From: Macrostomum lignano
Taxonomy: Eukaryota
DNA: 64,000 bases
NCBI GenBank assembly: GCA_002269645.1
Contig: NIVC01000843.1
Span: forward strand, 186,001-250,000
Direction: 5' to 3'
Below are positions 27,745 to 64,000 of this stretch, in pieces. Both the position numbers and the translations under genes were made by a program. Positions within the stretch are counted from its first letter, which is position 1, and the number at the start of each line of letters is the position of its first letter. The notes beneath the pieces were generated by a model that searched no databases, was not told the DNA's origin, and worked only from the letters and a program-made list of their open reading frames with translations.

Positions 27745-29087
27745 GAGCTGCTGCTGCGCTGGGGCGCATTGCTGGCCAACCGTCGATGCAGGCACTCCTC
27801 AGCGCGATGCTCCCGGTTGCACCTGTAGCACATTGCACTCTGGCGTCTTAGCTGATAAGGCGGCAGTCTCGAACTCGGCTGCGGCGGCTGTTGCAGCTGC
27901 GGCTGCTGCTGCTGCTGCTGTCGCCATCCTCCTGCCGGCGGCGTCCTTGGTGGCGGAATGCTGCCGTCATGCGGTTGCTGAAGCTGATGGAACTGTTGAT
28001 GCTGCACATTGCGTGTGCCGTTTGTCGCAAATTGAGCGCTTCCTTCAGCGCTGCGGCGAGGAGTCATGGGTACCAGACATCGGTTGCGCTGGCCCCAGGA
28101 GTCCCGCGGCTAGTGGCGAGCAGGTTTATATGGCTCCGGGGTGTCGTTATCTCGCGATCCCCGTGAGTAGAACTCCTGCATCTCATTGCTCAGGGCTTCT
28201 AGTAGACGTTGCTGCTCCTGCAGTGTCTCTGACTATTGCTCCATCACTTCTCGCAACCAATTTTCCTCGGGCCGAGGTGACTTGTCGTGTTGCACTCCAG
28301 TTGGTGGCTGACAGTCGTCATCCTCGAGAACCCGTACATGTCTCGCGGCCGGCGGTGGTGCTACTCGCTGAGCCAGGCTCGCTGCTGTCTCTAGGCGTAG
28401 CACTGCCCTTCTCGCTGCGGTTAGATTCTGCGGCCGTACCAGGATTAGCTGCTCTCTGGCTAACTGGGCGATTCGCACTCCGACCGTGAACTGGTCCACC
28501 AGTTCGGCCTGCTTCTGAACTGGGGTGAAGTGCGGGAATGCTCTATCAGCCAGAGCAATTAATCGGTCACCGTAGTCGTCGACACTCTCGTTTTTGCCTT
28601 GCTGGCAGCAACGGAACTGCTCCCGGTACTCCAGCGTGTCGGCCACGTGCGTGAAGCGCTCAGACAACCTCTGCTTGAACTCGCCAAACGTCAGATTGTC
28701 CGGCAGTTCCATCCTGACGACTGCGGGATATGTGGTGGCGATGTCCAGATTTACTAGGACTTCCGCCTTCTTTTGTCTGTCGTCCATGATCCCGTTGAGC
28801 TCACAACGCTCCTCGAGAGCCTGGATCCAGACGTCGAAATCCTGGTTTGGAGTGTACCGTTGAATCTTAACCGGTTTCGGCACTGGAGCTCAGTCCGGCT
28901 GTTGGGGCGGCTGGTACACGTGGTGATGGTGTTGTGGCTGTCCCAAATTAGCCTGCTCCAGTCGTTGTCGCACCTCTTCGGTCACCGCGCGGATCATCTC
29001 GTCGTAGGTAGGTCTTGTAGATGAATTGTCGGGGCCCGCGGCGTCGGTTGTCGCGTCCGCGGCCGTTGAGTTAGTAGTCGAAGCCAT
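27681..29087 (-). pseudogene. gag: gag
   Basis: One frame from ATG 29087 (MASTTN) to TAA 27681 with internal stops at 28890, 28233 and ~28112; retrotransposon gag core; C-terminal CYRCNREHRAEEC knuckle (CX2CX3HX4C). Confidence 0.9.
27738..27744 (-). promoter_or_regulatory. -1 ribosomal frameshift slippery heptamer G GGA AAC
   Basis: In gag frame (TCG GGA AAC); pol is in the -1 frame; the plus copy has G GGA AAT at 5777-5783. Confidence 0.8.
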
Positions 29088-29133
29088 AATGTAGATTCTG
29101 AACGACTCGTCGAATGGGTTTTGGCGTTTCGTT

Positions 29134-29154
29134 ATCCCACTTAGCTGACCACCA
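29134..29154 (-). promoter_or_regulatory. Primer-binding site
   Basis: TGGTGGTCAGCTAAGTGGGAT begins 1 nt after the 5' LTR; its complement ...ATCCCAC...CCA resembles a tRNA 3' end (Leu-like; identity not established). Confidence 0.65.
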
Positions 29155-29155
29155 G

Positions 29156-30181
29156 TGAGGTGGGGGTGGAGAAGAACTTTCTTAGAACGGTTGTTTTTTT
29201 GAATTTGCTGACACCAGTGAGGTGGGGCAGATTCCTCGTTTGAATTGCCGCTGGCATTGAGTTCGCACGAATAAAAACCGGAAAAACGCGCAGACGAATC
29301 ACAACGAAATTTCTTCTCCTGTTTTACTCCGACAGCTGGGTTCTCAAGTCCGGGGGGAGGGTAGTTGTAATCGTAGCGGAGCGGTCGTATAGTGGCCCGG
29401 TCGTTCAGATCCGTAGACTCAATTGGTCTTGACACCGTAAATCTGCTTTTGAATTGTCGTACTGATTACTGTCAATAGAGTAGTGCTGCCACCACCGTAA
29501 TTTGATCCGTATTACGGAACGTTGGGATCTCAGAGCTTGCTCAGAGTTGAGATTGATTCAGTTGTTTAACGCCCCACGGGCAAATGACTCAAGATAACTA
29601 TTATGGGCTTCGTTAACGAGATAGACTTAATTATTAGTTAATTAATATTATTTATTGATGTTGTACTAGCAGGCGTAAATTGGCAAAATAAAGTTAAATT
29701 CAGACGATTGATCCTCGGCCGGTGCCGGGTGGGACGACTAACTGCACAAACTAGTAGATCGAGACTAAATAAGTACTAATTTAACTTCGTGCACAACAGG
29801 AAATTAAACACTAAACAGACAAGTACACGAGGGTTCGCGAAGTGGAACGGAACGGAAAACGAACAAGTAGGAGGCAGGGGAAAGGAAAGATGAAAACTTG
29901 CGGCCCAAAATGGCCTTAATAAATAAATAGTGGGGCGATGTCATCCGGACGGGGATGGAGCAGCAGATGGGGCAGGAAGGCGAAGGATGGGGCAGGAGAT
30001 GAGGCGAAGGATGGGGCATCAGACGACAACAAAGCCGGGAATGAGAATAACAAAAAATTACGCGCGACGGCAAAAGATGGGGCGAGGGATGGGACATGGG
30101 ACGGCGCAACGGGTGACACAGAACGCGAGAGTCATTGCGGTGAGGTCACCTGTTCCAAACGTGGTAGTGCGCCCTACCACA
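29156..30181 (-). repeat. 5' LTR (1026 bp)
   Basis: Direct repeat of 19949-20971 with ~30 substitutions and 3 small indels. Confidence 0.97.
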
Positions 30182-40645: not shown

Positions 40646-40874
40646 ATGAATAAATGTTGATTTAATAGATTGGCTCATTAATTGATTGGTTTTACCTATT
40701 AATTATTTTTCAATAACTGATTGAGTGATTACTAATTGAGTAGTTTTTATTATTATTATGTTTGCTGTTATTAACCATCATCATATTGATTTATTGACTG
40801 CAAAAAGTGACTCTTCATTTTGGCACAACAGTAAACTTAGAATGAGTTGTAAAATATAAAATGGTAAATGGTAA

Positions 40875-41168
40875 TAAATAAATTGATTACACCTGCCCTG
40901 ATAGACAGATGTGCAGTCGACAGCGCAGCCGCAGCTATTGCGCAGCGCATCTGAAGGCTGCGTACGGCTGTTCAGTCCAAGTACTGGGGGGTCGCCACAC
41001 ACACCCTCAATTACCCCAGCTAATGCTGGCACCCATTTTACAGGTGGGTGAACTGAAGCAATGCAAGTGTCTTTGCTCAAGGACACAGCTTGTTTCAGTG
41101 GGATCGGGAATCGAAACCCCGACTTTTCATTTGCAAGTTCAACGGTCAAACAACTAGGCTACAACCCC
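40875..41168 (-). mobile_element. tRNA-derived SINE family B with V/Meta-like central domain
   Basis: Head with TAGCCTAGTTG and GTTTCGATTCC boxes; GTGTCCTTGAGCAA(A)GACACT core; matches 62481-62722. Confidence 0.85.
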
Positions 41169-44056: not shown

Positions 44057-44731
44057 ATGGCAACCAGCTCGGATCCAGACGAAAAACGCGTCCTTGACTA
44101 CATGCGCGACGCTAACAGACCCTATAGCGTTAATGACGTATTTAGTAATTTGCACAAAGCCGTAGGTAAAACTGCCATCCAACGCGCCTTGGACAGCCTT
44201 GTCTCTGCCGGCCTAATTAACGAGAAAACCTACGGCAAGCAGAAAGTTTACGTTGTTAAACAGCCTACTGCCAGTAGTAGTAATAGCGACGGTAGTGCGC
44301 CTACCAATGCTCTGCCGGACGAAGCTGAAAAACGCGATTTAGAGACTCGAGCTCAAACAGCCGAACGGGAACTAGTCGTTGAGCAGGCTGAGGTGAAAAA
44401 ATTACAACGCGAACTCGCGACTTTGCGTCAGCGACCAACTTGCGAACAATTGCGAGCTCGACTTGCCGAGCTACAAGCCGAATTGGCGCCTAAAACTGAA
44501 CGCCTGGCGGCCATAGACAGCGGCGAGGGTCGCAAGGTCACGCCGGAGTTGATGTCCGACGCGAGGAAGATACGCGCTAATCTTGTCTCGGAATGGCGCA
44601 AACGGAAACGGGCTTGCGTTGACCTGATCGACTGCGTATTGGAAGGCTATCCAGCTAGTAAGAAGGCCTTCTTTGAAGAGGTCGGATTGGAGACTGATGA
44701 AGAGCATAATGCGGTTGTTCCGAAAGTGTGA
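44057..44731 (+). CDS. PSMC3IP: Homologous-pairing protein 2 (HOP2/TBPIP), 224 aa, intronless
   Basis: Winged-helix N-terminus VLDYMRDANRPYSVNDVFSNL...KTYGKQKVY, coiled coil, and C-terminal EWRKRKRAC..L.D.VLEGYP.SKK.FFEEVGLETDE. Confidence 0.96.
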   Translation: MATSSDPDEKRVLDYMRDANRPYSVNDVFSNLHKAVGKTAIQRALDSLVSAGLINEKTYGKQKVYVVKQPTASSSNSDGSAPTNALPDEAEKRDLETRAQTAERELVVEQAEVKKLQRELATLRQRPTCEQLRARLAELQAELAPKTERLAAIDSGEGRKVTPELMSDARKIRANLVSEWRKRKRACVDLIDCVLEGYPASKKAFFEEVGLETDEEHNAVVPKV

Positions 44732-46200: not shown

Positions 46201-46368
46201 ACTCTCGTACATGCATGCAAGGAAGGGATATGCTCAAGAATATGCTGGATTTTCGAACGAATACCATACGAAACAATGACAACATGTTGTCTCTACTATT
46301 TGTAATAGGTGCGCCGCAAATCCGTATTATATTTCAGCCTTTGCTTAAAAAATAACACCAATAAAATA

Positions 46369-48777
46369 ATGGATAGAATTGACGATTCTGGGGCATTCTG
46401 TAAGCGGCCATCGACTAAGGACGACTTTCTTGATCTGGTTAATCAAAGGTATAGAATAGATTTCTTAAACTACTTATTTAGTAGCATATGTTTAAAAAGT
46501 TCGAAATTGCCGATATGTATCGTAATACGAATTTTTAATTAAAATCAGTTGTCTAATTCTTTTTGTAGCGAATCTTTGGCTAATCAACGGAAAAGATCAA
46601 AGAAAGCCGCAGCCGATGAGGCGGCTGGCGCAGCAGCAACCACAACTGGCAATTCGGAATCTATGGATGCCGATGCATTGTTAGATAGTGGGTTTAATTT
46701 ATATATATATTAATATTAACGATAAAAATAGATAGAAAATCTTAATTAGACTACTTTTAAATGAAACAGCCGTAGAAATGTTATCGTTTTTTATGTTATA
46801 ATTTCAGAACACGACCGGCACATTACTGCCGTACTGTCAGGGATTCGAGTGAGTGGATGCCTTTTTAATTAATATAATTTCAACTGTATTTATTTACTCG
46901 ACGTTTGTTTTTTAATTTCTTAGTCGGCCCAGTCTAAAATTCCAACTTCCTTATCTTATCTAATCTCCCTCTGGCATCTAATTGACTTTTTATTTTTATC
47001 TAACTCTCCCTTATCTCAGCCGACTCCTTATCTCTCTTTACCAGTCAGCAAAAGAAATAGCTCGGCCATAAAGCTGTTAAATTCCACACTGTATTTTATA
47101 TCTTGTTTTATACCTTGGCACTAAATTCTTCCTTGCGTTAGGAGTGCAGCTTCACTGATCGAGATGCAGCCAACGTCAGCATCACGCCTTGTCCTATGGG
47201 CTTTCCCAGAGCATTCCATCGAGACGATGAGTCCTCAGTGCAGAGCTTGCCATCAAAGCCAAGCTTCTCTGCTACTTCAGCGACTGGCCCTGCTAGTGCT
47301 GTTGGTGGTGGCTGCAGGAAGCCCAGCCTCTTTGCTATGCGGATGCAGCAGAAGCAGCAGAATGCTCACGAGTGTGCTGCGAATCAAACTGCAACACCCC
47401 CTGCCTCCTCAGCAGGTAGGATTTCTTTTCTACTAATTATCCAACCCTTCAACTCAGTTGCTGAGCCAGCCTCCCAAAGTGTCAGTTGCTGTGCCAGCCT
47501 CCCAGATCTTCAGTTGCTGGGCCAGCATCCCAGAGTGTCAGTTGCTGGGCCAGCCTCCCAGATCCTCAGTTGCTGAGCCAGCCTCCCAGATCCTTAGTTG
47601 CTGGGCCAGCCTCCCAGATCCTCATTGCTAGGCCAGCCTCCCAGATCCTCATTGCTGGGCCAGCCTCCCAGATCCTTAGTTGCTGGGCCAGCCTCCCAGA
47701 GTGTCAGTTGCTGGGCCAGCCTCCCAGATCCTCAGTTGCTGGGCCAGCCTCCCAGATCCTTAGTTGCTGGGCCAGCCTCCCAGATCCTCATTGCTAGGCC
47801 AGCCTCCCAGATCCTCATTGCTGGGCCAGCCTCCCAGATCCTCATTGCTGGGCCAGCCTCCCAAATCCATCATTGCTGAGCCAGCCTCCCAGATCCTCAT
47901 TGCTGAGCCAGCCTCCCAGATCCTCATTGCTGGGCCAGCCTCCCAAATCCTTAGTTGCTGGGCCAGCCTCCCAGAGTGTCAGTTGCTGGGCCAGCCTCCC
48001 AGAGTGTCAGTTGCTGTGCCAGCCTCCCAGATCCTTAGTTGCTGGGCCAGCCTCCCAGATCCTCAGTTGCTGGGCCAGCCTCCCAGAGTGTCAGTTGCTC
48101 GGCCAGCCTCCCAGATCCCCTGTCGCTGGGCCAGCTTTCCAGATTCTCAGTTGCTGGGCCAGCCTTCCAGATCCTCTGTCGCTGGGCCAGCCTCCCAGAT
48201 CCTTAGTTGCTGGGCCAGCCTCCCAGAGTGTCAGTTGCTGGGCCAGCCTCCCAGAGTGTCAGTTGCTGTGCCAGCCTCCCAGATCCTTAGTTGCTGGGCC
48301 AGCCTCCCAGATCCTCAGTTGCTGGGCCAGCCTCCCAGAGTGTCATTTGCTCGGCCAGCCTCCCAGATCCCCTGTCGCTGGGCCAGCTTTCCAGATTCTC
48401 AGTTGCTGGGCCAGCCTTCCAGATCCTCTGTCGCTGGGCCAGCCTCCCAGAGTGTCAGTTGCTGGGCCAGCCTCCCAGATCCTCAGTTGCTAAGCCACCC
48501 CCAGACTCCCTATCACTATCTAATCCTCATTTCATCATCAGCGCGCATTCGTATTCCAGTAAGCGTATCAGCGAGCCGACCGAAATCCCGGATCCTGATT
48601 GGCAGCGGGGTGTCTCCCTTCGCACCGGAAGCGGTCGTGCGGGACATCTCCGAGGAGAACTGGCGTCGGTTGGACAGCCTGCCCAGGGAGGAAATTCTCA
48701 AGGAGAAGCAGCGACTGGAGGACAGCATTGGTGAGAGTTAATTGTCTTTCTTTGTCTATCAGGCTGTACTGCCCTAG

Positions 48778-48812
<35 letters not shown>

Positions 48813-48813
48813 A

Positions 48814-48890
<77 letters not shown>

Positions 48891-51800
48891 TTCTGTCTAT
48901 CAGGCTGTACTGTCCTAGTGTCTGTCTGTCTATCTGTCTGTCTGTCTGTCTTTTTGTCTGTCCGTCTGTCTCAGTGTCTGTCTGTCTCTCTGTCTCAGTG
49001 TCTGTCTTTCTGTCTGTCCTTCTGTCTGTCTGTCTGTCTGTCTGTGTGTCTGTGTGCTGTCTGTCTGTGTGGCTGTCTGTCTTTCTGTCTGTCTGTCTGT
49101 CTGTGTGGCTGTCTGTCTTTCTGTCTCTCACCTGTATTTGACACTCCAATTCCCAGACCCCAGACTGCTCGCCTTCTTCAAGCAAGCCAAGAAAGACGCG
49201 GCCACTGGGCGTCAATCGCAGCGGCAGCAAGGACCAAAGCAGCAGCAGAAGCAGCAACACGTCAGCAAGCCGAAAGCAGACCCGAGCCAATCGGTGCCGT
49301 CAGAATCGGCCGCCACAACGCCCAGACTCGAGTCTGAGAAGCTCGCCTGGACTCGCGATCCCCAGCTGCCTGTGCCGAACTCCTCATCAGCTAGTGAGGC
49401 GCGATTCGATCTGTCTGGCAAGCTTATAGCTCCGGATGCTGACCTGCCGACTCACCTGGGCCTGCATCATCACGGCGACGAGCCGCACAGGGCCGGCTAC
49501 TCCGTGCCAGAGCTGTTCACGCTGGCCCGGTCCACCGTGCTGCAGCAGCGGGTGCTCGCGTTCACCATTTTGGCCAGGTTTGCGCGCCAAATAATGGTCG
49601 TTAAAGATTGGGTTTGTAGTCTATTGATTCGTCGGACTCACGACTTAAAGGTCGGTAGTTCGATTCCCGATCCCATGCACTGGAACAATTTGGGGCTCTT
49701 CCGCTAATAATTATATTTGTTAGAGTTCGATTTTTGATAAAGAAGAATCCTAAAGTAATACTAAGAATTTTCTAAGAATCCCACAAAACCTTGACTAACC
49801 TATTCGCAGCTATTTCCGCAGCTTGAAACTACTATCAGTAGTGTAATAGTAAATTGCTATGTGTTACAAAACTATTCCGCCAGAGCGCTAGACCGTTGGC
49901 ACCGAGGCGAGCTAGCAGCCGAACTTCAAGGCTGCCTGCCCGACCAGCTGCAGGACTCCGGTCTGCTGTTCCTGTGCCGCGTCGCCCTAGACGATGCCAA
50001 CGCTCCTCTAGCTGGCATCGAAGCCGCTCTGGACTGCCTTCGAGCCGCTCTATCGCCATGCGCCGATGTCGAAGAGTGCCGTTTAGGCCGGCTTCAAGTC
50101 TGGACTGGCTTCACCGCCGTTCAAGGACTTCGACCGGATTTGAAAGACGCCAATTTAGACGAATTGTCGTTAAACAACTTCGATCAAGACGAAGACAGCG
50201 TCGAAACTGACGACGATTTGATGCGACGCGATCCGTGTCAGGGCCTGCTGCGGACTCGACTGTTGGCCAGGCTGGCTCGTCTGCTGCCGCGGCTGGGCGC
50301 CCTCGGCTTGGGGGCCTGCGGCGCCGTGCTGACTAGGCTGACGCGGCACAGTCGGCGGGTGGCCAGATTGGTGCTGGATGCGCCTGGCTGCCTGGTGAAG
50401 AAATTTATTGACAGGTGAGTTACGTCGTACGTTTTATTTCACCTCTTAGTTTGTTATCTGACACTCCAGTGTGCTGTCTGACATTTCAGTGTTTTATCTG
50501 ACACCCCAGTGTGCTATCTGACACCCCAGTGTGCTATCTGACACCGTAAGTGTGTTTCTGACACCCCAGTGTGCTATCTGACATCCCAGTGTGCTATCTG
50601 ACACCCAGTGTGCTATCTGACAGTCCAGTGTGTTATCTAATATCCCAGTATGTTATCTGACACCCCGGTGTGTTTTACGACATCCTTTTCTTTCCAGCTG
50701 ACAACATAATGGTTTTCCCTGCTGGTTTTCCTTGACACCCTGCTGGTTTCCCTGACACCCTGCTGCTTTTCCTGACACTTTGATAGTTTCCTTGACAACC
50801 TGCTGGTTTCCCTGACACCCTCATGGTTTCCCTGACACCCTGATGGTTTCCCTGACACCCTGATGGTTTCCCTAACACCCTGATGGTTTCCCTGACACCC
50901 TGCTAGTTTCCCTGACACCCTGCTAGTTTCCCTGACACCCTGCTAGTTTCCCTGACACCCTGATGGTTTCCCTGACACCCTGCTAGTTTCCCTGACACCC
51001 TGATGGTTTCCCTGACACCCTGATGGTTTCCCTAACACCCTGCTAGTTTCCCTGACACCCTGCTAGTTTCCCTGACACCCTGCTAGTTTCCCTGACACCC
51101 TGATGGTTTCCCTAACACCCTGCTAGTTTCCCTGACACCCTGCTAGTTTCCCTGACACCCTGCTAGTTTCCCTGACACCCTGCTAGTTTCCCTGACACCC
51201 TGCTAGTTTCCCTGACACCCTGATGGTTTCCCTGACACCCTGCTAGTTTCCCTGACACCCTGCTGGTTTTCCTGACACCCTGCTGGTTTCCCTGACACCC
51301 TGCTGGTTTTCCTGACACCCTGCTAGTTTCCCTGGCACCCTGATTTTTTTCCTTACACCCTGATGGTTTTCCTGACACCCTGATGGTTTCCCTGACACCC
51401 TGATGGTTTCCCTAACACCCTGATGGTTTTCCTGACACCCTGCTGGTTTCCCTGACACCCTGCTAGTTTCCCTGACACCCTGCTGGTTTTCCTGACACCC
51501 TGCTGGTTTCCCTGACACCCTGCTAGTTTCCCTGGCACCCTGATTTTTTTCCTTACACCCTGATGGTTTCACTGACACCCTGCTGGTTTCCCTGACACCC
51601 TGCTAGTTTCCCTGACACCCTGATGGTTTTCCTGACACCCTGATGGTTTCCCTGACACCCTGCTGGTTTCCCTGACACCCTGCTGGTTTCCCTGACACCC
51701 TGCTAGTTTCCCTGTTACCCTGCTGGTTTTCCTGACACCCTGCTGGTTTCCCTGACACCCTGCTAGTTTCCCTGGCACCCTGATGGTTTTCCTGACACCC

Positions 51801-52776
51801 TGATGGTTTCACTGACACTCTGCTGGTTTCCCTGACACCCTGCTAGTTTCCATGACACTGTGATAGTTTCCTTGACACCCTGATGATTTCCCTGACACCC
51901 TGCTAGTTTCCATGACACTGTGATAGTTTCCTTGACACCCTGATGATTTCCCTGACACCCTGCTAGTTTCCCTGACAACCTGATGGCTTTCCTGACACCC
52001 CGATGGTTTTCCTGACACCCTGATGGTTTCCCTGACACCCTGATGGTTTCCCTGACACCCAGCTAGTTTCCATGACACTGATAGTTTCTTTGATACCCTG
52101 ATGGTTTCCCTGACACCCTGCTAGTTTCCCCGACACCCTGATGGCTTCCCTGACACCCTGATAACTGTTAAAGCAGCATACCTTGCACAACAGCAATCCT
52201 GAGAGCACTATTCTCCCCCACTCTACCAGGTGCCTCTCCTACTCAAGCGAGTCTAACAACCTCGCCGTCGCCGTGTGGGCCTTTCGTCTGGCCCGCGCCC
52301 TCCGCCTGGCTCTGCCGGCACCGCTGGACCTGCCCTGCCTGTCCTCGGCAGGCTGCCGGACCGCCTTGGCCCTGGTCTGGCCGGGCGTCTCCGCTGCCGA
52401 GCCGCTGTGGCTCAGAGCGGCCCTGCTACCTGGCCTGGAGCTCGGCAACATCGCCGACTATCTGGCTGCTCAGCCCGAGCTAGCGGCCGAACAGTTGGCT
52501 CCGTTAATTCGTCGATGCATTCGCGACAGCGATCTGGTGACGGCGGAGGCTGTTGGCGGAGTTCTGGACTCGCTAATCTCTGTAGTTAACAATAGCCATA
52601 ATGCCGGTACGTCTGCGGCTGAACTGCTGGAAACTGTGGATGCCACCTCAGGCTTCGTGTGGGAGGTGAGACGGTCGCAGATCATTTGATTCCTTTCCCG
52701 TTTTATGGGCTTGCTTGCCTCCGTTCTTAGGTACCTTTAAAAGTTTTACCATTACAGTCACTATCTATCTGTCTAT

Positions 52777-52818
<42 letters not shown>

Positions 52819-52819
52819 G

Positions 52820-52898
<79 letters not shown>

Positions 52899-52923
52899 GT
52901 CTATCTATCTATCTATCTATCTG

Positions 52924-52962
<39 letters not shown>

Positions 52963-53395
52963 GTCTATCTATCTATCTATCCATTTATCTATCTATCTAT
53001 CTATCTATCTATCCATTTATCTATCTATCTATCTATCTATCTCGCTCTTTCTCGCTATCTACTATCTATTGCCAGGACCTGCACCGGAGCGGTTACGAAA
53101 ATTATATTTCTCGGTAGTTGCACGTACTCTTTTGCACTACTTGAGTAGTCTGATTTTCGTTCGGCATGGCTGGTTCCAGCAGGTAGTTCCTCTGGATAAA
53201 AGCGCTTACCGCGCCCATTGGCTTTCCAGCTGCCTTAATCGTTTCCGGTGATCTTGTGTGCGTGCTTTCAGCTTGATTGGCTGCGGCAAGCAAGCTCGAA
53301 AGAGCTCGCTTCGCTCGCTCTTTCTCGCTATCTACTATCTATCTATCTATCTATCTATTTATCTATCTATCCATCTATCTATCTATCCACCTACA

Positions 53396-53464
<69 letters not shown>

Positions 53465-53515
53465 GTCTATCTATCTGTCTATCTATCTATCCATCTATCT
53501 ATCTATCCACCTACA

Positions 53516-53576
<61 letters not shown>

Positions 53577-53617
53577 GTCTATCTATCTATCTATCTATCG
53601 ATCTATCTATCTATCTG

Positions 53618-53680
<63 letters not shown>

Positions 53681-53681
53681 G

Positions 53682-53731
<50 letters not shown>

Positions 53732-56229
53732 CATCTATCTATCTGCCTATCTATCTATCTATCTATCTATCTATCTGTCTATCTATATCTATCTATCATA
53801 CAGGTAGCGGCACCCTGGGCGACCAGTCAAGCCGCACCGCAGACCGCCAGCTGGCACTCCATCGGCACGGCGGCCCTCCTGCTTCGCGTTCGCCTGTCTG
53901 CTCTGATCGCTCGACACGCCGGCAGCAATCCGACTCGACTTCAACGCGAAGCCGCGGCTGCAGCAGGCGGCGGCAGTCTGGTCAGCGGCCTGCTGCACCA
54001 GCTGGCCTCCCTGTCGAGCCAGTACCGCAGCCAGGCGAGCATTCTGCTGGCCTCGAGGCGCTGCAGGCGATCTGCCAGACTAACCAGCCTGGCATCGCGT
54101 CGGCTGCCTCAGCTGTGTTCCTCCGCGGCCTTCTGCCAGCAGCCAGCCAAGATCGATAACGATTCTGCAGTGGACAGCGGCTCAACCACGCAATCAATCG
54201 TCTGCTCTCTATTTGATGATGTTCAACTGCAAGAGGCTGATAATACTACTAGTAGTAGTATTAGTAATAGCTCGTGCGGTGTGCTGCTTCAATTAGTTTT
54301 GCTAAGCCGCTTGGTTGTTGAACGACTGCCGGACCTGCTGACTAAAGAGGATGCTCAGCTGGTAGGATGCTGATCGGGGAAAATTTAGGGGATGGAGAGT
54401 TTTAAAGTCTGCATGCTGTAAGAAAAATATTTTACCTGACTAAAGTATGAGCTGCTGCTCTAAGTCACCTTATCGTGGCTTTGTAAGCTTCAAATCCCAT
54501 TCTGTAGCTTTAAATCCCATTGCGTTGCTTCAAATCCCATTCTGTAGCTTTAAATCCCATTGCATAGCTTCAAATCCCATTGCATAGCTTCAAATCCCAT
54601 AGCATAGCTTAAAATCCCATTCCTTTGCTTAAAATCCTATTCCTTTGCTTAAAATCCCATTGCATAGCTTCAAATCCCATTGCATAGCTTCAAATCCCAT
54701 TGCATAGCTTCAAATCCCATAGCATAGCTTAAAATCCTATTCCTTTGCTTAAAATCCCATTGCATAGCTTCAAATCCCATTGCATAGCTTAAAATTCCAT
54801 TCTTTAGCTTCAAATCCCATTGCATAGCTTAAAATCCCATTCCTTTGCTTAAAATCCTATTCTTTAGCTTCAAATCCCATTGTATAGCTTCAACTCCCAC
54901 TTTATACCTTCGAATCCCATTGCATAGCTTCAAATCCCATTCTTTAGCTTCAAATCCCATTCTTTAGCGTCAAATCCCATTCTTTAGCGTCAAATCCCAT
55001 TCTTTAGCGTCAGATCCCATTCTTTAGCGTCAGATCCCATTCTTTAGCGTCAAATCCCATTCTTTAGCGTCAAATCCCATTCTTTAGCGTCAGATCCCAT
55101 TCTTTAGCGTCAAATCCCATTGCATAGCTTCAAATCCCATTCTTTAGCTTCAAATCCCATTCTTTAGCGTCAAATCCCATTCTTTAGCGTCAGATCCCAT
55201 TATTTAGCGTCAAATCCCATTCTTTAGCGTCAAATCCCATTCTTTAGCGTCAAATCCCATTCTTTAGCGTCAAATCCCATTCTTTAGCGTTAAATCCCGT
55301 TCTTTAGCTTCAAATCCCATTGTATAGCTTCCAATCCCATTATTGTATAGCTTTAAATCTCATTGTAAGCTAAGATTCTGAAAGTTTATGGTCACGCACT
55401 TCATTTCATTCCCAATCATTCACCCGCAGCTCTCCACCGGCTTAGCCGACCTATTAACCAGCGGCTTTGAACTTGCCGCCCATCCAGTAGGCTCGCTGTG
55501 CTCCGGTTTCATTCAACTGGAACTGCGGCTGCTCTGCGAAGCGGCCCATCTATTTCAACGTCTGTCGCTGTTGTCAACACCTGTCAGGTCGTCTTGGTCC
55601 TCATTTGCCGGGCTTGTAGCCTTCCTAGCTGGAGCTCTGCCCTCCGGAATGGAGGCCCAGCTTCGGCAACTGTTCGATCGGCTACTGTTCACGCCTGACT
55701 TTGTCGACTCTTTAAGTAGCGACTCGACCGGCGTAGACTTAGAATTAAAACGTCGAGCTAGAGACTGCTTAGCAACTGCTCGGGATGTCTATTCGGCTAT
55801 GATTGGACCGGAGATCGGGCAGGCTCGGATAGCCGGGCCGCTGCTGCCGCAGGACTGGGTCTGGCTGCCGCTGCTGACCACTCGCGCTGATGATGAAGAA
55901 GAAGACACTGATGAAGCTGCTAGGGAAGCTGCGGCCAGGTGGGCGGCTCTGCTAGATAGCTTCGGCTTGGCTCCATCGCCTTGTCCGGCAGCGAGGCTTG
56001 CTCGCCTTCTCGCCGTCCTGTCGGCGTCTTCGTCGCCTACACCGGCTGCCCTGCAGCCGCTGGTGGCCGCCTGCTGTCGGCCGCGGTTCCTGCGCAGCCT
56101 GGACACCGAGGCGCCCGTGCCCGGGGTGGCCAACTTCTACGATGCCTGGACTGATGCGCTGAGGCACTATCAGGTAGGGGCTGGCCGGTTGCGGCGGACT
56201 AACTCACGGACTGACAGATGAACAGATAA

Positions 56230-56315
<86 letters not shown>

Positions 56316-59300
56316 TGACTGACTGACTGACTGACTGACTGACTGACTGACTGACTGACTGACTGACTGACTGACTGACTGACTGACTGACTGACTGACT
56401 GACTGACTGACTGACTGACTGACTGACTGACTGACTGACTGACTGACTGACTGACTGACTGACTGACTGACTGACTGACTGACTGACTGACTGACTGACT
56501 GACTGACTGACTGACTGACTGACTGACTGACTGACTGACTGACTGACTGACTGACTGACTGACTGACTGACTGACTGACTGACTGACTGACTGACTGACT
56601 GACTGACTGACTGACTGACTGACTGACTGACTGACTGACTGACTGACTGACTGACTGACTGACTGACTGACTGACTGACTGACTGACTGACTGACTGACT
56701 GACTGACTGACTGACTGACTGACTGACTGACTGACTGCAAATTCAGTCAGTTACTGACTGCAATACTACTTGTGAGTATTTGCAACTTTGGGCTTATGAA
56801 ATAAAGTGAAAACAATATGAAAATGAAAACTTCACTACATAGCTATATGAAAATATAATAGAGTAACATGTTGTGCATGTTAAGTTAAAAGAATGGTAGT
56901 CTTCATTGCCCCAGATCAAATACAATCACTGATTTTGTGACGAAAAACAGATTTTTTCCTATCTTCGCAGTGTATTTTTTCCAGGAAATCGTGGCCTAAA
57001 AAAAATTGCACGATTTTTGAGTTTTACGTCCTGTTAGTCTAGAAGTCCTTGATTCACAGATTGAGATTGCCAATAACGGGGTCCCCATTACTCGTCATTC
57101 TCTAGACTCTGAAAACGACAGGCAAAGATGGACCCATTCAGTCTGTTGGTTACTTATACCAGCGGCTCTGCTGCTTTCAAGAGTGTCAATAAGCTTCAAA
57201 CTTGGCGTCCTCTGTCATTAACGTTGCAAAATATCCTTGAGGTGCTGGCCTACCTACAATTTTCGTGCACAAGCCCCAGACTGAATTTGGCTAGATAAAC
57301 AGCTAGGCACCCGGCCTTCCCGCCACAATCCCACAGGGCGCAGGCTACGGTGATGCGCACTTCGCCAACGCCCTGCTGATTCCCTGCGGTCTGAGGCATC
57401 ACGTGAAATATCGGCGCGCAATCTGGGGCGAAATGTCCGCCTGTCTGCGCGTCTTGCCGCTGCGCTTTGATCAGCTGCTGCTGCCGCTGGAGCACCTGCT
57501 TGGCGATGGAGAACGGAGTCTTGAGATGCTGCGACTCTACGCACAGGAACTGCTTAGTAGTCGAGTTGCCTGCGAACGGTGAGAATCTAACAAAGCAGTA
57601 GTAGCACTGATAGAGTCGCTCATATAAAGATAAAAACGAGAGCGGGATGCATTGCGAGTTGCGCTAGAATTTGATATTTTGATGGATTTTTTTCAAGTCT
57701 GTCTTACTAAGTTAATAAATAGAGATTTATTTAGTACGAGATATATGAGAGTTTATCAGGGGCGTCGCCATGGATTTATGGTAGGGGGGACAAAGCCAAG
57801 AATTCAACACTGATAGAGGCACATGACTAAATTGCTACATCTCCATTTTTTGAAAATCGTGTTTTTAGCGCCGCAGGCACTCATTTTGGCGCCGCGGGCA
57901 TTCATTTTGGCGCCGCGGGCACTCATTTTGGCGCCGCAGGCACTCATTTTGGCGCCGCAGGCAATCATTTTGGCGCCGCGGGCACTCATTTTGGCGCCGC
58001 AGGCACTCATTTTGGCGCCGCAGGCACTCATTTTGGCGCCGCAGGCACTCCTTTTAGCGCAGCAGGCACTCATTTTGGCGCCGCGGGCACTCATTTTAGC
58101 GCCGCAGGAACTCATTTTGGCGCCGCAGGCACTATATTAAGGCGCCCTGAATAAACATTATTGATTACCACAACGGGTCACAAAGTGGGGTGGGGGGGGG
58201 ACAAAGCATTGACATGCGCCCCAAAGCTTTTACTGGGGGGGGGTCCCCCTGTCCCCCCGTCCCCCCGTCCCCCCGGTGGTGGCGACGCGCCTGGAGTTTG
58301 TATAAGCTTTGGCCATAGACCAGGTCTCGTACACGTGTTCGTTTCCCGATTGACATTCGGATTCACATTCAGGTTTTAGCAAAGCCGCTGTAACTTTTCT
58401 TTACTTGAACGAAACGCTTTAGAATTTTACAAAAACTTTGACGCAATCAAGAAAAAAAACTACGTAAAATATCTCGGCATTTAAAAATAGACTGTACAAA
58501 TTATTCACTTATAAAGTTTGTTCCTATCTCCTTAGTGTATTATTATGCAACTCAACAAAACGGCTTAAAATACACGCAGAGCTACGAAACTTTATATTTC
58601 TCTTGACGCACGCGAGATGCATTGGCAAATAAAAAATCAGCACCCTAGCTTAAAGCCTGTACGAGTTTAATGAAGTTTCGTAGCTCTGCGTTGAGTAGAA
58701 GTGTCTGTCAGCGAATGTCAAGCTGGATCCCCAAAATACACTACGGAGATAGGAACACAGTTTGCAGGTGAATAACTCGTACAGGCTTTAAGCAGCTCTG
58801 TTAAAATTTGAATGTGAATCTGAATGTCAATCGGGAAATGAATACGTGTCTCGTACTAGGTCTCGTAGACTAGGTCTCGTAGACTAGGTCTCGTTTACAC
58901 GAGACTCGTACTTTGTTTCCAGTCCTGTGTGATTAAAAAGTCCTTGGGCTCGTAGTAAAAACAATATTACTGTTGGCTACATTGGTCTCTTTCTTCACTT
59001 ATGAGGTTGGCATGAGTTTGTCCACTGTGACTTTTCAGTGCAAATCGCCCCCACTCCCTGGCTGCTCTACCGATTAACAACCGTGTGTTACTATACTGTC
59101 TCTCTTGACCATAGACTACTACTAGCGTATAGGGAAAGACTAGTCGATTTCTACAGTCGGGATGCAGAAGCTGCCGTGTAGTCAGCAGAGTTGGATCCTT
59201 GACTATAGCTTATATTGAGACACCTTTAAGCAAATATTTAGACAATCTTCCTGCCAATGCCTAGGTCGCCGGTTCCCTACGCCTTGGCTGTGCACCACCT

Positions 59301-59607
59301 GTCAGTATTTCTCTACCAGCGCCTACCGGATGACACGCCAGTTGCTGCCGAGTTCCGCACTGTGCTCTGGTCGCATCTGCTCAGCTTGCACAAGACCGAG
59401 TCTTCGTCAAAACTGTCTCAGAAGGATCGTCAGCAGCGACTGCTGCTGGCTCACCTGGTGCTGTGCGATCGATGTGAATCGCCGTTGCTTCGCTTGCACA
59501 CTTGTGGCCTGCCAGCTGGGAGGCTACGGGTGATTGTCAGCTACTTGGATGGCAGTGCCGCCGAGGCTGACAGACTTGTGTCCGCCTGTGTCGCTGCTTT
59601 GGAGTAG
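46369..59607 (+). CDS. RPAP1: RNA polymerase II-associated protein 1
   Basis: Phase-consistent exons 46369-46448, 46569-46687, 46808-46848, 47142-47415, 48542-48730, 49157-49577, 49884-50414, 52230-52665, 53804-54361, 55430-56173, 57337-57578, 59265-59607. Motifs [41 protein letters not shown]...[53 protein letters not shown]. Confidence 0.95.
47455..48495. repeat. ~28-bp minisatellite GTTGCTGGGCCAGCCTCCCAGATCCTCA (intronic)
   Basis: Direct inspection; accounts for ORFs 47486-48493. Confidence 0.95.
48770..49130. repeat. (TCTG)n microsatellite (intronic)
   Basis: Direct inspection. Confidence 0.96.
50450..52165. repeat. Two adjacent related 20-bp minisatellites (GACACCCCAGTGTGCTATCT; CCCTGACACCCTGCTAGTTT)
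   Basis: Direct inspection; intronic. Confidence 0.95.
52760..53797. repeat. (TATC)n microsatellite split by a ~250-bp unique insert
   Basis: Arrays at 52760-53040 and 53335-53797; 27-bp direct repeat flanks the insert. Confidence 0.95.
54480..55345. repeat. 20-bp minisatellite CAAATCCCATT(C/G)(T/C)(T/A)TAGC(G/T)T (intronic)
   Basis: Direct inspection. Confidence 0.95.
56228..56740. repeat. Compound (GACA)n-(GACT)n microsatellite (intronic)
   Basis: Direct inspection; the GACT tract of ~420 bp is perfect. Confidence 0.98.
57757..58293. mobile_element. hAT-type MITE carrying a 21-bp minisatellite
   Basis: TIR CAGGGGCGTCGCCA / TGGCGACGCGCCTG; 8-bp TSD GAGTTTAT / GAGTTTGT (7 of 8 match); internal GCACTCATTTTGGCGCCGCAG array at ~57865-58135. 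Confidence 0.8.
58320..58860. mobile_element. Foldback-like non-autonomous element
   Basis: IRs ACACGTGTTCGTTTCCCGATTGACATTCGGATTCACATTCA / TGAATGTGAATCTGAATGTCAATCGGGAAATGAATACGTGT, plus internal IRs. Confidence 0.6.
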
Positions 59608-59779
59608 CTGACTCGCTGACCAAGTTTTTGTTCACTCCTTTTAGTTGTTAAATTGCCAACCAATTGTTCCATTTTTCCTGAATAAGTCTTCTGAACAAAG
59701 ACTGCTTTAATTTTTTTCTGGAAACAGTAAAAACTACTCCTTTGAATCCGTAGAATCGTCATCAACGACTCCTTGGAAT

Positions 59780-61022
59780 CGCCATAAACCACTCGCTGGA
59801 ATCGCCATCAACCACCCCCTGGAATCGCCATCAACCACTCCCTGAAATCGCCATCAACCACTCCCTAAAATCGCCATCAACCACTCCCTAAAATCGCCAT
59901 CAACCACTCCCAGAAATCGCCATCAGCCACTCCCTGGAATCCCCAGAAACCACTCCCTGGAATCCCCAGAAACCACTCCCTGGAATCGCCATAAACCACT
60001 CCCTGGAATCCCCAGAAACCACTCCCTGGAATCGCCATCAGCCACTCCCTGGAATCCCCAGAAACCACTCCCTGGAATCGCCATAAACCACTCCCTGGAA
60101 TCCCCAGAAACCACTCCCTGGAATCGCCATCAGCCACTCCCTGGAATCCCCAGAAACCACTCCCTGGAATCGCCATCAGCCACTCCCTGGAATCCCCAGA
60201 AACCACTCCCTGGAATCGCCATAAACCACTCCCTGGAATCCCCAGAAACCACTCCCTGGAATCGCCATCAGCCACTCCCTGGAATCCCCAGAAACCACTC
60301 CCTGGAATCCCCAGAAACCACTCCCTGAAATCGCCATCAACCACTCCCTGGAATCGCCATCAACCACTCCCTAAAATCGCCATCAACCACTCCCTGAAAT
60401 CGCCATCAACCACTCCCTAAAATCGCCATCAACCACTCCCTAAAATCGCCATCAACCACTCCCAGAAATCGCCATCAGCCACTCCCTGGAATCCCCAGAA
60501 ACCACTCCCTGGAATCCCCAGAAACCACTCCCTGGAATCGCCATAAACCACTCCCTGGAATCCCCAGAAACCACTCCCTGGAATCCCCAGAAACCACTCC
60601 CTGGAATCGCCATCAACCACTCCCTGGAATCCCCAGAAACCACTCCCTGGAATCGCCATCAGCCACTCCCTGGAATCGCCATCAGCCACTCCCTGGAATC
60701 CCCAGAAACCACTCCCTGGAATCGCCATAAACCACTCCCTGGAATCCCCAGAAACCACTCCCTGGAATCGCCATCAGCCACTCCCTGGAATCCCCAGAAA
60801 CCACTCCCTGGAATCCCCAGAAACCACTCACTAAAATCGCCATCAACCACTCCCTAAAATCGCCATCAACCACTCCCTAAAATCGCCATCAACCACTCCC
60901 TGAAATCGCCATCAACCACTCCCTGAAATCGCCATCAACCACTCCCTGAAATCGCCATCAACCACTCCCTAAAATCGCCATCAACCACTCCCTGAAATCG
61001 CCATCAACCACTCCTTAAAATC
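59780..61022. repeat. 23-bp two-variant minisatellite AACCACTCCCTGGAATC(GCCATC/CCCAGA)
   Basis: Direct inspection; accounts for the minus-strand ORFs 59877-60873. Confidence 0.96.
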
Positions 61023-62480: not shown

Positions 62481-62722
62481 CCCACTGGAACAGTTTGTGT
62501 CCTTGAGCAAGACACTTAACTCTGCATTGCTTCAGTTCACCCAGCTGTAAAATGGGTGCCAGCATTAGCTGGGGTAATTGAGGGTGTGTGTGGCGACCCC
62601 CCAGTCCTTGGACTGAACAGCCGTACGCAGCCTTCAGATGCGCCGCGCAATAGCTGCGGCTGAGCTGTCGGTTGCACATCTGGCCCAATTGGGACAGGTG
62701 TAATCAATTATTATTATTATTT
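62481..62722 (+). mobile_element. SINE family B, 5'-truncated
   Basis: Matches the reverse complement of 40875-41100; (ATT)n tail. Confidence 0.85.
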
Positions 62723-62967: not shown

Positions 62968-64000
62968 TCAGAGTCCATCGTTGACAATTTCTAAATATTC
63001 TGTTGCGTCGCTTTGAGGCCGATTGACCTCCGTCTGATCATGGGACGACGTTGGAAGCAGCACGGAATACGTGACGGTCTTTGATTCCTGTATAAAGTTT
63101 GGGTATTGCACTGCTGTTATGTATCATGCGCTAATTATTCCAGAGTAGAACTTACATCTGCAAAATATGTTGTAGTCGCTGCTCTTGCTAGCTTCGGTTC
63201 TTGCTGCGGTTGTAACATTTCGTGGTTCACAGTTGCTGAATTCTCTTCAGAGGTTGGACTGGTACCAGTAGTCACGAGCAGTTGTACTGGCAAATCCTGC
63301 TGCAAATCATGTTTTCAAGTTGACACGTTTAGCATCAATGATTGAAAGTTAAATGTGGCGCTTTCTTTAAGAAGATGTATACCTTTTTTAATCGCCAAAT
63401 GATATTTACGACAAAGCCGCCCAAAACAGTCAATATAACGACGCCCAGCACGATTGCAACAATGAACACCAACTTATGTCGTTCTGTCTCATTGCAAATC
63501 TTCATACTTTTATTCCGATGGACGCTCCACAAAACTTTCGATTCGTTGTACTGAATTGCTTCACAATTTACCGTCAATACATTGCTAACGCTGCAATTCG
63601 GGCACAGCCAAACTGATTTAAATGTGTACGCTTTTGTTTTACTAACGTTAGCGATTAAGACCAGTGAAATACTGTTATTTAGCGAGTCGGAAGCTGCGCA
63701 GCTGTGCTCAGGAGCCGGCTCAGAATGCCAGGACTCGAATAAAAATTGTTAAGTCAGCGAGCCGGATGTGAGGCATTGACCATCGCTAGTGTTTGCAGAG
63801 ATTTTCAAATTTTCAGGCGGATCTGATATTTAAAAGACAAGTTGCTATTCATCCGAAATAGGTTATTTACCAACACACGTCAGTAGATTTATCATTTATG
63901 AACTTACAAAATACTTGGAGATGTCTGCTCTTGATGTCAAGCGGTTGTCCACTAAAACTGCTGCTGCAAGTGTAATTCCCAGCATCTTCTGGTCGAGCTT
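62968..64000 (-). CDS. 3' part of a type I Ig-superfamily membrane receptor with ITIM and ITSM (5' end outside the window; one in-frame TAA)
   Basis: Phase-consistent exons >64000-63908, 63822-63383, 63299-63156, 63087-62968. Ig motif EDAGNYTC then LQVF|YPP; several NxS/T sequons; TM LVFIVAIVLGVVILTVLGGFVVNII followed by WRLKK; tail VTYSVL...TEYLEI; TAA at 63749-63751. Confidence 0.85.

What the first reader, a model, noticed from the sequence alone, without database searches (positions are those of the whole stretch)
62968..64000. Invertebrate Ig-superfamily receptor with a PD-1/Siglec/PECAM-like tandem ITIM + ITSM tail
Joining four unannotated minus-strand exons, all phase-compatible with GT-AG sites, gives Ig domain (EDAGNYTC), glycosylated stalk, TM helix and a ~90-aa tail. 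The last exon encodes VTYSVL (exact ITIM, V-x-Y-x-x-L; 63058-63075) and TEYLEI (exact ITSM, T-x-Y-x-x-I; 62986-63003), with the tyrosines 24 residues apart. That is the spacing range used by vertebrate inhibitory receptors to engage tandem SH2 phosphatases (SHP-1/2). Such an architecture in a probable flatworm suggests an undescribed inhibitory immune or allorecognition receptor system, comparable to cnidarian Alr proteins.
Basis: partly seen in the sequence, partly recalled or inferred. Interest (0 to 1): 0.82.

Follow-up and report, generated by a model that had tools for sequence, protein, structure and literature searches.

The report
Flatworm Ig receptor gene, ITIM/ITSM tail
The end of this window holds the last four exons of a Macrostomum lignano immunoglobulin-type membrane glycoprotein whose tail has two tyrosine motifs like those of vertebrate inhibitory receptors, but this copy has a stop codon before the membrane anchor, has no detectable relatives, and belongs to a kind of receptor already described in other invertebrates.

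Summary
The window is Macrostomum lignano (Mlig_3_7, NIVC01000843.1:186001-250000), so "probable flatworm" is right. The four minus-strand exons, GT-AG junctions, EDAGNYTC Ig motif, 26-residue TM helix, 91-aa tail, VTYSVL (ITIM), TEYLEI (ITSM) and the 24-residue tyrosine spacing are all at the stated coordinates.

Independent signs that this is a real gene:
- The Ig motif occurs only once in the window's six reading frames.
- N-glycosylation sequons are enriched: 8 against 2.4 expected (P=3e-4).
- A phase-1 intron sits at the Ig domain boundary.

With the only strong acceptor (63822), it lies inside exon 2, in a second, membrane-proximal Ig-like domain. GC content and codon usage there look like exon, and the splice routes that avoid the stop use weak sites. 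As assembled, this copy is most likely a nonsense allele or young pseudogene in a redundant neopolyploid genome.

No homologue was found for the C-terminal 234-264 aa, and there is no paralogue in the window. The upstream exons could not be fetched. The motif pair is unlikely by chance (0.07-0.4% of tail shuffles), but both motifs also fit YxxΦ sorting signals.

ITIM-bearing IgSF receptors are already described in oyster, Botryllus, Hydractinia and amphioxus. Verdict: a new member of a known kind, with unproven function and modest interest.

The parts
63908..64000 (-). Exon 1 (cut by the window edge; frame starts at 63998). It encodes the F-G strands of an Ig domain, ARPEDAGNYTCSSSFSGQPLDIKSRHLQVF. 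EDAGNYTC is at 63989-63966. The exon ends with one base of a split Tyr codon (phase 1).
   Evidence: D.G.Y.C occurs only here in all six frames of the window. Pfam ig E=0.028, below threshold because only 17 residues are available. It aligns with the end of CD22 Ig domain 6, E=0.085, not significant.
63823..63907 (-). Intron 1, 85 nt, GTAAGT...TATCAG, phase 1, at an Ig domain boundary.
   Evidence: GC 0.31, against 0.41-0.49 in the exons. Donor score 2.2 and acceptor score 3.5.
63383..63822 (-). Exon 2: a membrane-proximal Ig-like domain (YPPENLKIS...C...W...C), the TM helix and the RLKK stop-transfer. It is interrupted by an in-frame TAA.
   Evidence: The junction LQVF-Y-PPENLKIS aligns with the CD22 d6/d7 boundary LEVL-Y-APRRLRVS. 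Both sides of the stop have exon-like GC (0.49 and 0.43), and the reading frame gives the best codon score. There are 8 sequons in the 147-aa ectodomain part, against 2.4 +/- 1.3 in shuffles.
63749..63751 (-). In-frame TAA stop inside exon 2, between ...CLTSGSLT and QFLFESWHSEP..., upstream of the TM helix and the tail.
   Evidence: The only GT upstream of it within the exon is a weak donor (63780, score -0.6). All routes that avoid the stop score -0.2 or lower when donor and acceptor scores are summed, or use acceptors scoring 0.4 or lower.
63395..63472 (-). Transmembrane helix LVFIVAIVLGVVILTVLGGFVVNIIW (26 aa), followed by RLKK (63394-63383).
   Evidence: Mean Kyte-Doolittle 2.78. The AlphaFold2 single-sequence model gives a helix at residues 88-121, with 10-residue block mean pLDDT of 82-95.
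63300..63382 (-). Intron 2, 83 nt, GTATAC...TTGCAG, phase 0.
   Evidence: GC 0.34.
63156..63299 (-). Exon 3: the first 48 aa of the tail after RLKK (QDLPVQLLVTTGTSPTSEENSATVNHEMLQPQQEPKLARAATTTYFAD).
63088..63155 (-). Intron 3, 68 nt, GTAAGT...ATACAG, phase 0.
   Evidence: GC 0.37.
62968..63087 (-). Exon 4: the last 39 aa (ESKTVTYSVLLPTSSHDQTEVNRPQSDATEYLEIVNDGL) and the TGA stop (62970-62968).
63058..63075 (-). VTYSVL. It fits the ITIM consensus [SIVL]xYxx[ILV] and also YxxΦ.
62986..63003 (-). TEYLEI. It fits the ITSM consensus TxYxx[VI] and also YxxΦ. Its Tyr is 24 residues after the ITIM Tyr.

Best explanation
This is the 3' part of a lineage-specific Macrostomum lignano IgSF gene. It encodes a type I membrane glycoprotein with at least two Ig-like domains, one TM helix and a 91-aa tail.

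In an intact copy, the tail tyrosines in VTYSVL and TEYLEI would be phosphorylated by a Src-family kinase. Together they would dock the two SH2 domains of an SHP-2/Corkscrew-type phosphatase in the parallel bivalent mode: N-SH2 on the ITIM and C-SH2 on the ITSM. That would make the protein an inhibitory or adhesion-signalling receptor.

The copy in this assembly carries a TAA nonsense codon in the exon for the membrane-proximal Ig-like domain. Here the gene is most likely a nonsense allele or very young pseudogene among the duplicated copies of a neopolyploid genome.

Shown: the gene anatomy, the motifs, the stop codon, and that the protein is extracellular and glycosylated.
Inferred: phosphorylation, SHP-2 docking, any inhibitory function, and that the stop is a true variant rather than an assembly error.
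For: Organism: the window's Hop2 gene lies on NIVC01000843.1 of GCA_002269645.1. NIVC01 is the Mlig_3_7 M. lignano assembly, which has 180 Mb of duplicated non-repetitive blocks at least 95% identical.

Real gene:
- Canonical GT-AG junctions and short AT-rich introns.
- A single D.G.Y.C motif in the window's six frames.
- A phase-1 intron exactly at the Ig domain boundary, which aligns with the CD22 d6/d7 boundary.
- Sequon enrichment, P=3e-4.
- A TM helix followed by a basic stop-transfer.

The stop lies in an exon:
- 63822 is by far the best acceptor (3.5, against 0.4 or less for the alternatives).
- DNA on both sides of the TAA has exon-like GC, and the same frame gives the best codon score.
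- A Cys...Trp...Cys pattern spans the stop.

Motifs:
- Both fit the consensus exactly. ITIM-then-ITSM 15-35 residues apart arises in 0.074% of tail shuffles.
- PD-1 and BTLA have a 25-residue spacing, and they optimally bind SHP1/SHP2 in the bivalent parallel mode (PMC8631942).
Against: - No homologue, orthologue or paralogue was found, so motif conservation is untested.
- Both motifs are also YxxΦ sorting signals.
- Two unrelated ITIM-ITSM pairs occur by chance in the window's open frames.
- With the stop codon, the tail is not translated from the best splice model.
- The signal peptide and the number of Ig domains lie outside the window.
- Pfam ig is below threshold, and the second domain has no Pfam hit.
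- The AlphaFold2 ectodomain model has pLDDT below 50.
- There is no AATAAA within 1.3 kb downstream of the stop codon on this strand.
- No expression data were available.
Confidence: 0.5

Rival explanations
1. The gene is functional. The TAA is avoided by an alternative 3' splice site: E1 joined to 63612, giving a short 45-aa glycosylated stalk. Alternatively it is an assembly or strain-specific substitution. Either way a TM receptor with the ITIM/ITSM tail is made. The stop-containing form could give a soluble isoform.
For: - Everything downstream of the TAA is intact: 209 open codons over three exons and all splice sites.
- Acceptor 63612 (aaatcag|) is phase-compatible and gives a stop-free four-exon model.
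- Botryllus FcoR genes switch tails through variants with premature stops (PMC12582321).
Against: - Acceptor 63612 scores 0.4 against 3.5 for 63822. It would make intron 1 295 nt, where the neighbouring introns are 68-85 nt.
- The skipped 210 nt look like exon in GC and codon usage, and carry 3 sequons and the start of an Ig-like domain.
- The frame is kept on both sides of the TAA, so this is a substitution. It is not the indel type of error that I would expect from long-read assemblies (my own knowledge).
Confidence: 0.3
2. The tyrosine motifs are not immunoreceptor signalling motifs. The protein is an adhesion or recognition IgSF molecule, and YSVL and YLEI serve as AP-2 YxxΦ endocytic or sorting signals, or have no function.
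For: - Every ITIM or ITSM is by definition also YxxΦ.
- A single ITIM arises in 15% of tail shuffles and a single ITSM in 3.6%.
- Chance pairs occur elsewhere in the window.
- No conservation evidence is available.
Against: - Both motifs together, in the canonical order and with 24-residue spacing, are rare in shuffles (0.074%).
- They sit in the last exon, in a tail with only 3 tyrosines.
Confidence: 0.35
3. This is not a gene. It is a chance arrangement of open frames and GT-AG pairs in non-coding DNA.
For: - No homologue was found in any database searched.
- Pfam hits are below threshold.
- There is an in-frame stop.
Against: - Exon/intron contrast in GC and codon score.
- Sequon enrichment.
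- A TM helix with a stop-transfer.
- An Ig F-strand motif plus a domain boundary at a phase-1 intron.
Confidence: 0.04

Closest known systems
Vertebrate tandem ITIM-ITSM IgSF receptors (PD-1, BTLA, PECAM-1, CD33-related Siglecs/CD22, CEACAM1)
   Same: - Type I IgSF ectodomain, a single TM helix and a short tail with the ITIM N-terminal to the ITSM.
- Tyrosines 24 residues apart, against 25 in PD-1 and BTLA (PMC8631942).
- The motif sequences VTYSVL and TEYLEI resemble CEACAM1 VTYSTL and PD-1 TEYATI. This is recalled from memory and is a lead only.
   Different: - No significant sequence similarity. The best PDB hit is CD22 d6-d7 at E=0.085, and it covers only generic Ig boundary residues.
- At least two Ig-like domains, so unlike PD-1 or BTLA.
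- The N-terminal domain that would define a Siglec is outside the window.
- The reading frame is interrupted in this copy.
Oyster ITIM-bearing IgSF inhibitory receptors (CgNCAM1; CgIgIT/CgIgIT2)
   Same: Lophotrochozoan IgSF type I receptors. CgNCAM1 has a cytoplasmic tail with two ITIMs, interacts with the phosphatase CgSHIP2 and dampens inflammatory gene expression (PMC11841013). For the IgIT proteins I saw only the paper titles, which call them inhibitory (refs 93 and 94 in PMC11999971).
   Different: - No detectable homology.
- CgNCAM1 has Ig plus FN3 domains and two ITIMs, not an ITIM plus an ITSM.
- The oyster function was tested experimentally. Nothing has been tested for this gene.
Invertebrate allorecognition IgSF families (Botryllus Fester/FcoR; Hydractinia Alr)
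   Same: Lineage-specific IgSF receptors. Their tails carry ITIM, hemITAM or ITAM-type tyrosine motifs, and they have no orthologues outside their lineage (PMC12582321).
   Different: - Those are clustered multigene families in polymorphic haplotypes. Here there is no paralogue within 63 kb on one side, and polymorphism is unknown.
- No allorecognition phenomenon in Macrostomum is known to me.
Amphioxus ITIM/ITSM-bearing inhibitory LRR receptor phosphorylated by Lck
   Same: An invertebrate receptor described as a tyrosine phosphorylation-dependent inhibitory receptor associated with Lck (PMC8211107; title and abstract only).
   Different: It has an LRR ectodomain, not IgSF, and is from a deuterostome.

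Membership tests
Immunoglobulin superfamily | An Ig domain recognised by a profile at the curated threshold. | tested here: inconclusive
   Pfam ig E=0.028, 15.2 bits against a 21.8-bit cut-off, on residues 2-18 only. The rest of that domain is outside the window. The second domain has no Pfam hit.
Immunoglobulin superfamily | F-strand D-x-G-x-Y-x-C motif and a Cys(B)...Trp(C)...Cys(F) pattern. | tested here: met
   EDAGNYTC is the only D.G.Y.C in the six frames of the window. The second domain reads GQC-x15-W...TVNCEA across the TAA. The structure model was too uncertain to confirm the fold (pLDDT below 50).
Immunoglobulin superfamily | Domain exons bounded by phase-1 introns (from my own knowledge of IgSF gene structure). 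| tested here: met
   The E1/E2 junction splits the Tyr codon T|AT exactly at the boundary LQVF-Y-PPENLKIS. This aligns with the CD22 d6/d7 boundary.
ITIM/ITSM inhibitory receptor (functional class) | Type I membrane topology: signal peptide, ectodomain, one TM helix, cytoplasmic tail. | tested here: inconclusive
   The TM helix, the RLKK stop-transfer and a sequon-rich ectodomain are present. The signal peptide lies outside the window and could not be fetched.
ITIM/ITSM inhibitory receptor (functional class) | ITIM [SIVL]xYxx[ILV] and ITSM TxYxx[VI] in the tail, about 25 residues apart, with the ITIM first. | tested here: met
   VTYSVL and TEYLEI have tyrosines 24 residues apart. This arrangement arises in 0.074% of tail shuffles. 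The spacing rule is from PMC8631942.
ITIM/ITSM inhibitory receptor (functional class) | An open reading frame that joins the ectodomain to the tail. | tested here: not met
   There is an in-frame TAA at 63751-63749 under the best-supported splice model. The feature is met only with the weak acceptor 63612.
ITIM/ITSM inhibitory receptor (functional class) | Tyrosine phosphorylation and recruitment of SHP-1/SHP-2/SHIP; an inhibitory effect. | not testable with these tools
   This needs biochemistry. The presence of an SHP-2/Csw orthologue in M. lignano is expected from general knowledge but was not checked; the literature search found nothing.
ITIM/ITSM inhibitory receptor (functional class) | Motifs conserved in orthologues or paralogues. 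| tested here: inconclusive
   No relatives were found to compare. The databases searched evidently lack the Mlig_3_7 proteome: the window's own RPAP1 was not returned.
Siglec / CD22 | Significant sequence similarity; an N-terminal V-set domain with the sialic-acid-binding Arg. | tested here: not met
   The only hit is CD22 d6-d7 at E=0.085, limited to generic Ig boundary residues. The N-terminal domain is not in the window.
Allorecognition IgSF clusters (Alr, Fester/FcoR) | Tandem cluster of paralogues; high allelic polymorphism. | tested here: inconclusive
   No paralogue at protein or DNA level in window positions 1-62967. The other side of the gene and polymorphism could not be examined.

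The most novel reading that the evidence does not exclude
Intact homeologous copies of this gene exist and are expressed. They belong to a Macrostomum- or flatworm-specific family of IgSF receptors that signal through a bivalent ITIM-ITSM/SHP-2 module. This would be the first such inhibitory receptor in Platyhelminthes. It would show that the tandem ITIM-ITSM design with about 25-residue spacing either predates the protostome-deuterostome split or arose again by convergence.
Probability: 0.15. Interest if true: 0.6.

Novelty: new member of a known kind. Interest (0 to 1): 0.3.

Why it matters
If an intact, expressed copy exists and its motifs bind the flatworm SHP-2, it would extend ITIM/ITSM inhibitory signalling to Platyhelminthes. 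A recent review says IgSF work in that phylum has mainly been identification of molecules, with limited insight into function (PMC11999971). M. lignano can be made transgenic and is a regeneration model, which would make the pathway testable. As it stands, the finding is one lineage-specific IgSF gene copy with a premature stop, and the concept is already established in oysters, tunicates, cnidarians and amphioxus. The gain is incremental.

Tried and rejected
1. Fetching the upstream exons beyond position 64000.
- I spent two protein searches on the neighbouring RPAP1 gene. The annotated 1329-aa product is not in that database. Only an old-assembly UniRef fragment, P0001, came back, and it is not on record as a gene.
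- I tried to rebuild the RPAP1 splicing with a home-made dynamic-programming gene finder. The best biological model gives 1335 aa, not 1329.
- The last RPAP1 exon as a stand-alone ORF is not on record either.

2. Homologue searches.
- 264-aa model against 5.8 billion proteins: none.
- 122-aa stalk plus TM against 1.84 billion representatives: two hits, one internally repetitive protein and one very long repeat-rich one. I judged both spurious.
- JGI metagenome contigs: none.

3. Splice routes around the TAA. There is only one GT upstream of it in the exon, and all alternatives are weak.

4. AlphaFold2 on the contiguous 122 aa. Only the TM helix is confident, and the ectodomain has pLDDT below 50, so I ran no fold search.

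5. Literature. There is nothing on ITIM receptors or SHP-2 in Macrostomum or other flatworms.

6. I considered and rejected readthrough or recoding of TAA. I have no evidence for it.

Full report
**Source.**
- The intronless ORF at window 44057-44731 (Hop2/TBPIP) is encoded exactly on NIVC01000843.1 of GCA_002269645.1, at a position that puts the window at record coordinates 186001-250000.
- NIVC01000000 is the Mlig_3_7 assembly of the free-living flatworm Macrostomum lignano (PMC5730564).
- A UniRef M. lignano protein matches the window's RPAP1 exons at 84-100% identity in the shorter aligned blocks.
- The gene in question runs off the window end. Its 5' part lies at record positions above 250,000.

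**The observation.** On the minus strand:

| Part | Window coordinates | Content |
|---|---|---|
| E1 | 64000(edge)-63908 | ARPEDAGNYTCSSSFSGQPLDIKSRHLQVF plus one base |
| E2 | 63822-63383 | second Ig-like domain, TM helix, RLKK |
| E3 | 63299-63156 | first 48 aa of the tail after RLKK |
| E4 | 63087-62968 | last 39 aa and the TGA stop |

- All three introns are GT-AG, are 85, 83 and 68 nt long, and are AT-rich (GC 0.31-0.37, against 0.41-0.49 in the exons).
- The phases match: phase 1, then 0, then 0.
- The TM helix LVFIVAIVLGVVILTVLGGFVVNIIW (63472-63395, mean Kyte-Doolittle 2.78) is followed by RLKK. AlphaFold2 models it as a helix whose 10-residue block mean pLDDT is 82-95.
- The tail is 91 aa with three tyrosines. 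VTYSVL (63075-63058) fits the ITIM consensus and TEYLEI (63003-62986) the ITSM consensus. Their tyrosines are 24 residues apart.

- With acceptor 63822, exon 2 reads YPPENLKISANTSDGQCLTSGSLT-TAA-QFLFESWHSEP...
- I tested whether the stop could be intronic.
  - Acceptor 63822 (ttttaaatatcag|) scores 3.5 on a simple splice matrix. The phase-compatible acceptors downstream of the stop score 0.4 (63612) or below.
  - The exon holds only one GT before the stop, and it is a weak donor (63780, score -0.6).
  - The DNA on both sides of the TAA has exon-like GC (0.49 and 0.43). It scores best in the same reading frame with a codon table trained on M. lignano genes of this window, at values like the undisputed exons and unlike the introns.
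  - The junction sequence LQVF-Y-PPENLKIS aligns with LEVL-Y-APRRLRVS, the boundary between Ig domains 6 and 7 of CD22. The E-value is 0.085, which is not significant as homology, but it shows that this is the generic end of one Ig domain and A strand of the next.
  - The following sequence has a Cys, a Trp 15 residues later and a ...TVNCEA... Cys. That is an Ig-like spacing, and it spans the stop.
- I conclude that exon 2 encodes a second, membrane-proximal Ig-like domain and that the TAA is a nonsense substitution within it.
- Everything downstream is intact: 209 codons and all splice sites. The lesion is therefore recent, or specific to this copy.
- Mlig_3_7 contains 180 Mb of duplicated non-repetitive blocks at least 95% identical, because the DV1 line is a neopolyploid (PMC10733133). 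A nonsense allele among redundant copies is plausible.
- An assembly substitution error, or use of the weak acceptor 63612 (a stop-free model with a 45-aa stalk), cannot be excluded.

**Is it a real gene?** Several independent signs say yes.
- Exons and introns contrast in composition.
- The only D.G.Y.C motif in the six frames of the 64-kb window sits at the end of E1.
- A phase-1 intron sits at the domain boundary.
- The 147-aa ectodomain part has eight N-x-S/T sequons, against 2.4 +/- 1.3 in shuffles (P=3e-4).
- A textbook TM helix and stop-transfer are present.
- Pfam gives only sub-threshold ig (E=0.028) because just 17 residues of that domain are in the window.

**Are the motifs more than chance?**
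- Shuffling the tail gives an ITIM in 15% of shuffles, an ITSM in 3.6%, both in 0.38%, and both in the observed order 15-35 residues apart in 0.074%.
- Against that, two unrelated ITIM-then-ITSM pairs occur in the window's 52,629 open-frame residues, one of them in a microsatellite.
- A genome with thousands of membrane proteins will contain a few such tails by chance.
- Both motifs are also YxxΦ sorting signals.
- Conservation would settle this, but no relative could be found. The 264-aa model had no hit among 5.8 billion proteins. The 122-aa stalk plus TM gave only two spurious repeat-protein hits among 1.84 billion representatives. Metagenome contigs gave none. There is no paralogue in the window.
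- These databases evidently lack the Mlig_3_7 proteome, since the window's own 1329-aa RPAP1 was not returned. The null result therefore says nothing about homeologous copies in M. lignano or about whether the locus is annotated.

**How it would work.**
- In an intact copy, the order (ITIM first) and the spacing (24 residues) match PD-1 and BTLA (25 residues). In those receptors the two phosphotyrosines optimally engage N-SH2 and C-SH2 of SHP-1/SHP-2 in a parallel bivalent mode (PMC8631942).
- The most likely mechanism is therefore Src-family phosphorylation followed by recruitment of the SHP-2/Corkscrew orthologue. This step is inferred, not shown.

**Comparison and novelty.**
- ITIM-bearing IgSF receptors are already described outside vertebrates:
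  - oyster CgNCAM1, with two ITIMs, which binds CgSHIP2 and inhibits inflammatory genes (PMC11841013);
  - oyster IgIT/CgIgIT2, described as inhibitory receptors in their paper titles (refs 93 and 94 in PMC11999971);
  - Botryllus FcoR and Hydractinia genes (PMC12582321).
- Amphioxus has a tyrosine phosphorylation-dependent inhibitory receptor with an LRR ectodomain (PMC8211107).
- For platyhelminths, a recent review notes only identification of IgSF molecules.
- This is thus a new, lineage-specific member of a known kind. It is possibly the first candidate in a flatworm, but it has a broken reading frame in this copy and no functional, expression or conservation evidence. There is nothing here to support an allorecognition system.

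**Limits.** The upstream exons, the signal peptide, the number of Ig domains, expression, other genomic copies and the flatworm SHP-2 could not be examined with the tools available.

Noticed in passing
window 23171-29435 (minus strand); second fragment 6481-9210 (plus strand): An LTR-retrotransposon-type element with long open frames for gag (Retrotrans_gag, E=6.6e-5, just below the curated cut-off), RT RNase H, and integrase (rve, Integrase_H2C2). A degraded related copy elsewhere carries an Integrase_H2C2 remnant. I did not reconstruct it.
   Followed up: partly
window 44057-44731 (+): An intronless Hop2/TBPIP (PSMC3IP-like) gene of 224 aa, annotated in GCA_002269645.1 with WHD_TBPIP and LZ3wCH domains.
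   Followed up: yes
window 46339-59607 (+): An RPAP1 gene with introns full of microsatellites. My best model has a 41-nt exon (46808-46848...HDRHITAVL...) and an RPAP1_N-like exon (47142-47415). It totals 1335 aa, against 1329 aa in the annotation, so at least one junction differs. The older UniRef model A0A1I8F4X9 mixes reading frames.
   Followed up: partly
window 56233-56737; 59753-61014; 57863-58133; also 33-37 kb, 47.4-49.2 kb, 52.7-53.8 kb: Very long simple repeats: (GACT)126, a 23-bp satellite of 55 copies, a 21-bp repeat of 13 copies, and many tetranucleotide arrays that create long spurious ORFs in several frames.
   Followed up: partly
window 62481-62722 and 40866-41102: A 245-bp interspersed repeat, 88% identical and in opposite orientation. 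One copy lies about 250 bp downstream of the IgSF gene's stop codon, in its presumed 3' UTR or flank. No AATAAA occurs on the gene's strand within 1.3 kb after the stop.
   Followed up: partly
window 63383-63520 (protein residues 95-139 of the model): A weak Pfam match to DUF7583 (E=0.09, 13.3 bits against a 27-bit cut-off) in the membrane-proximal domain. It is probably noise.
   Followed up: no
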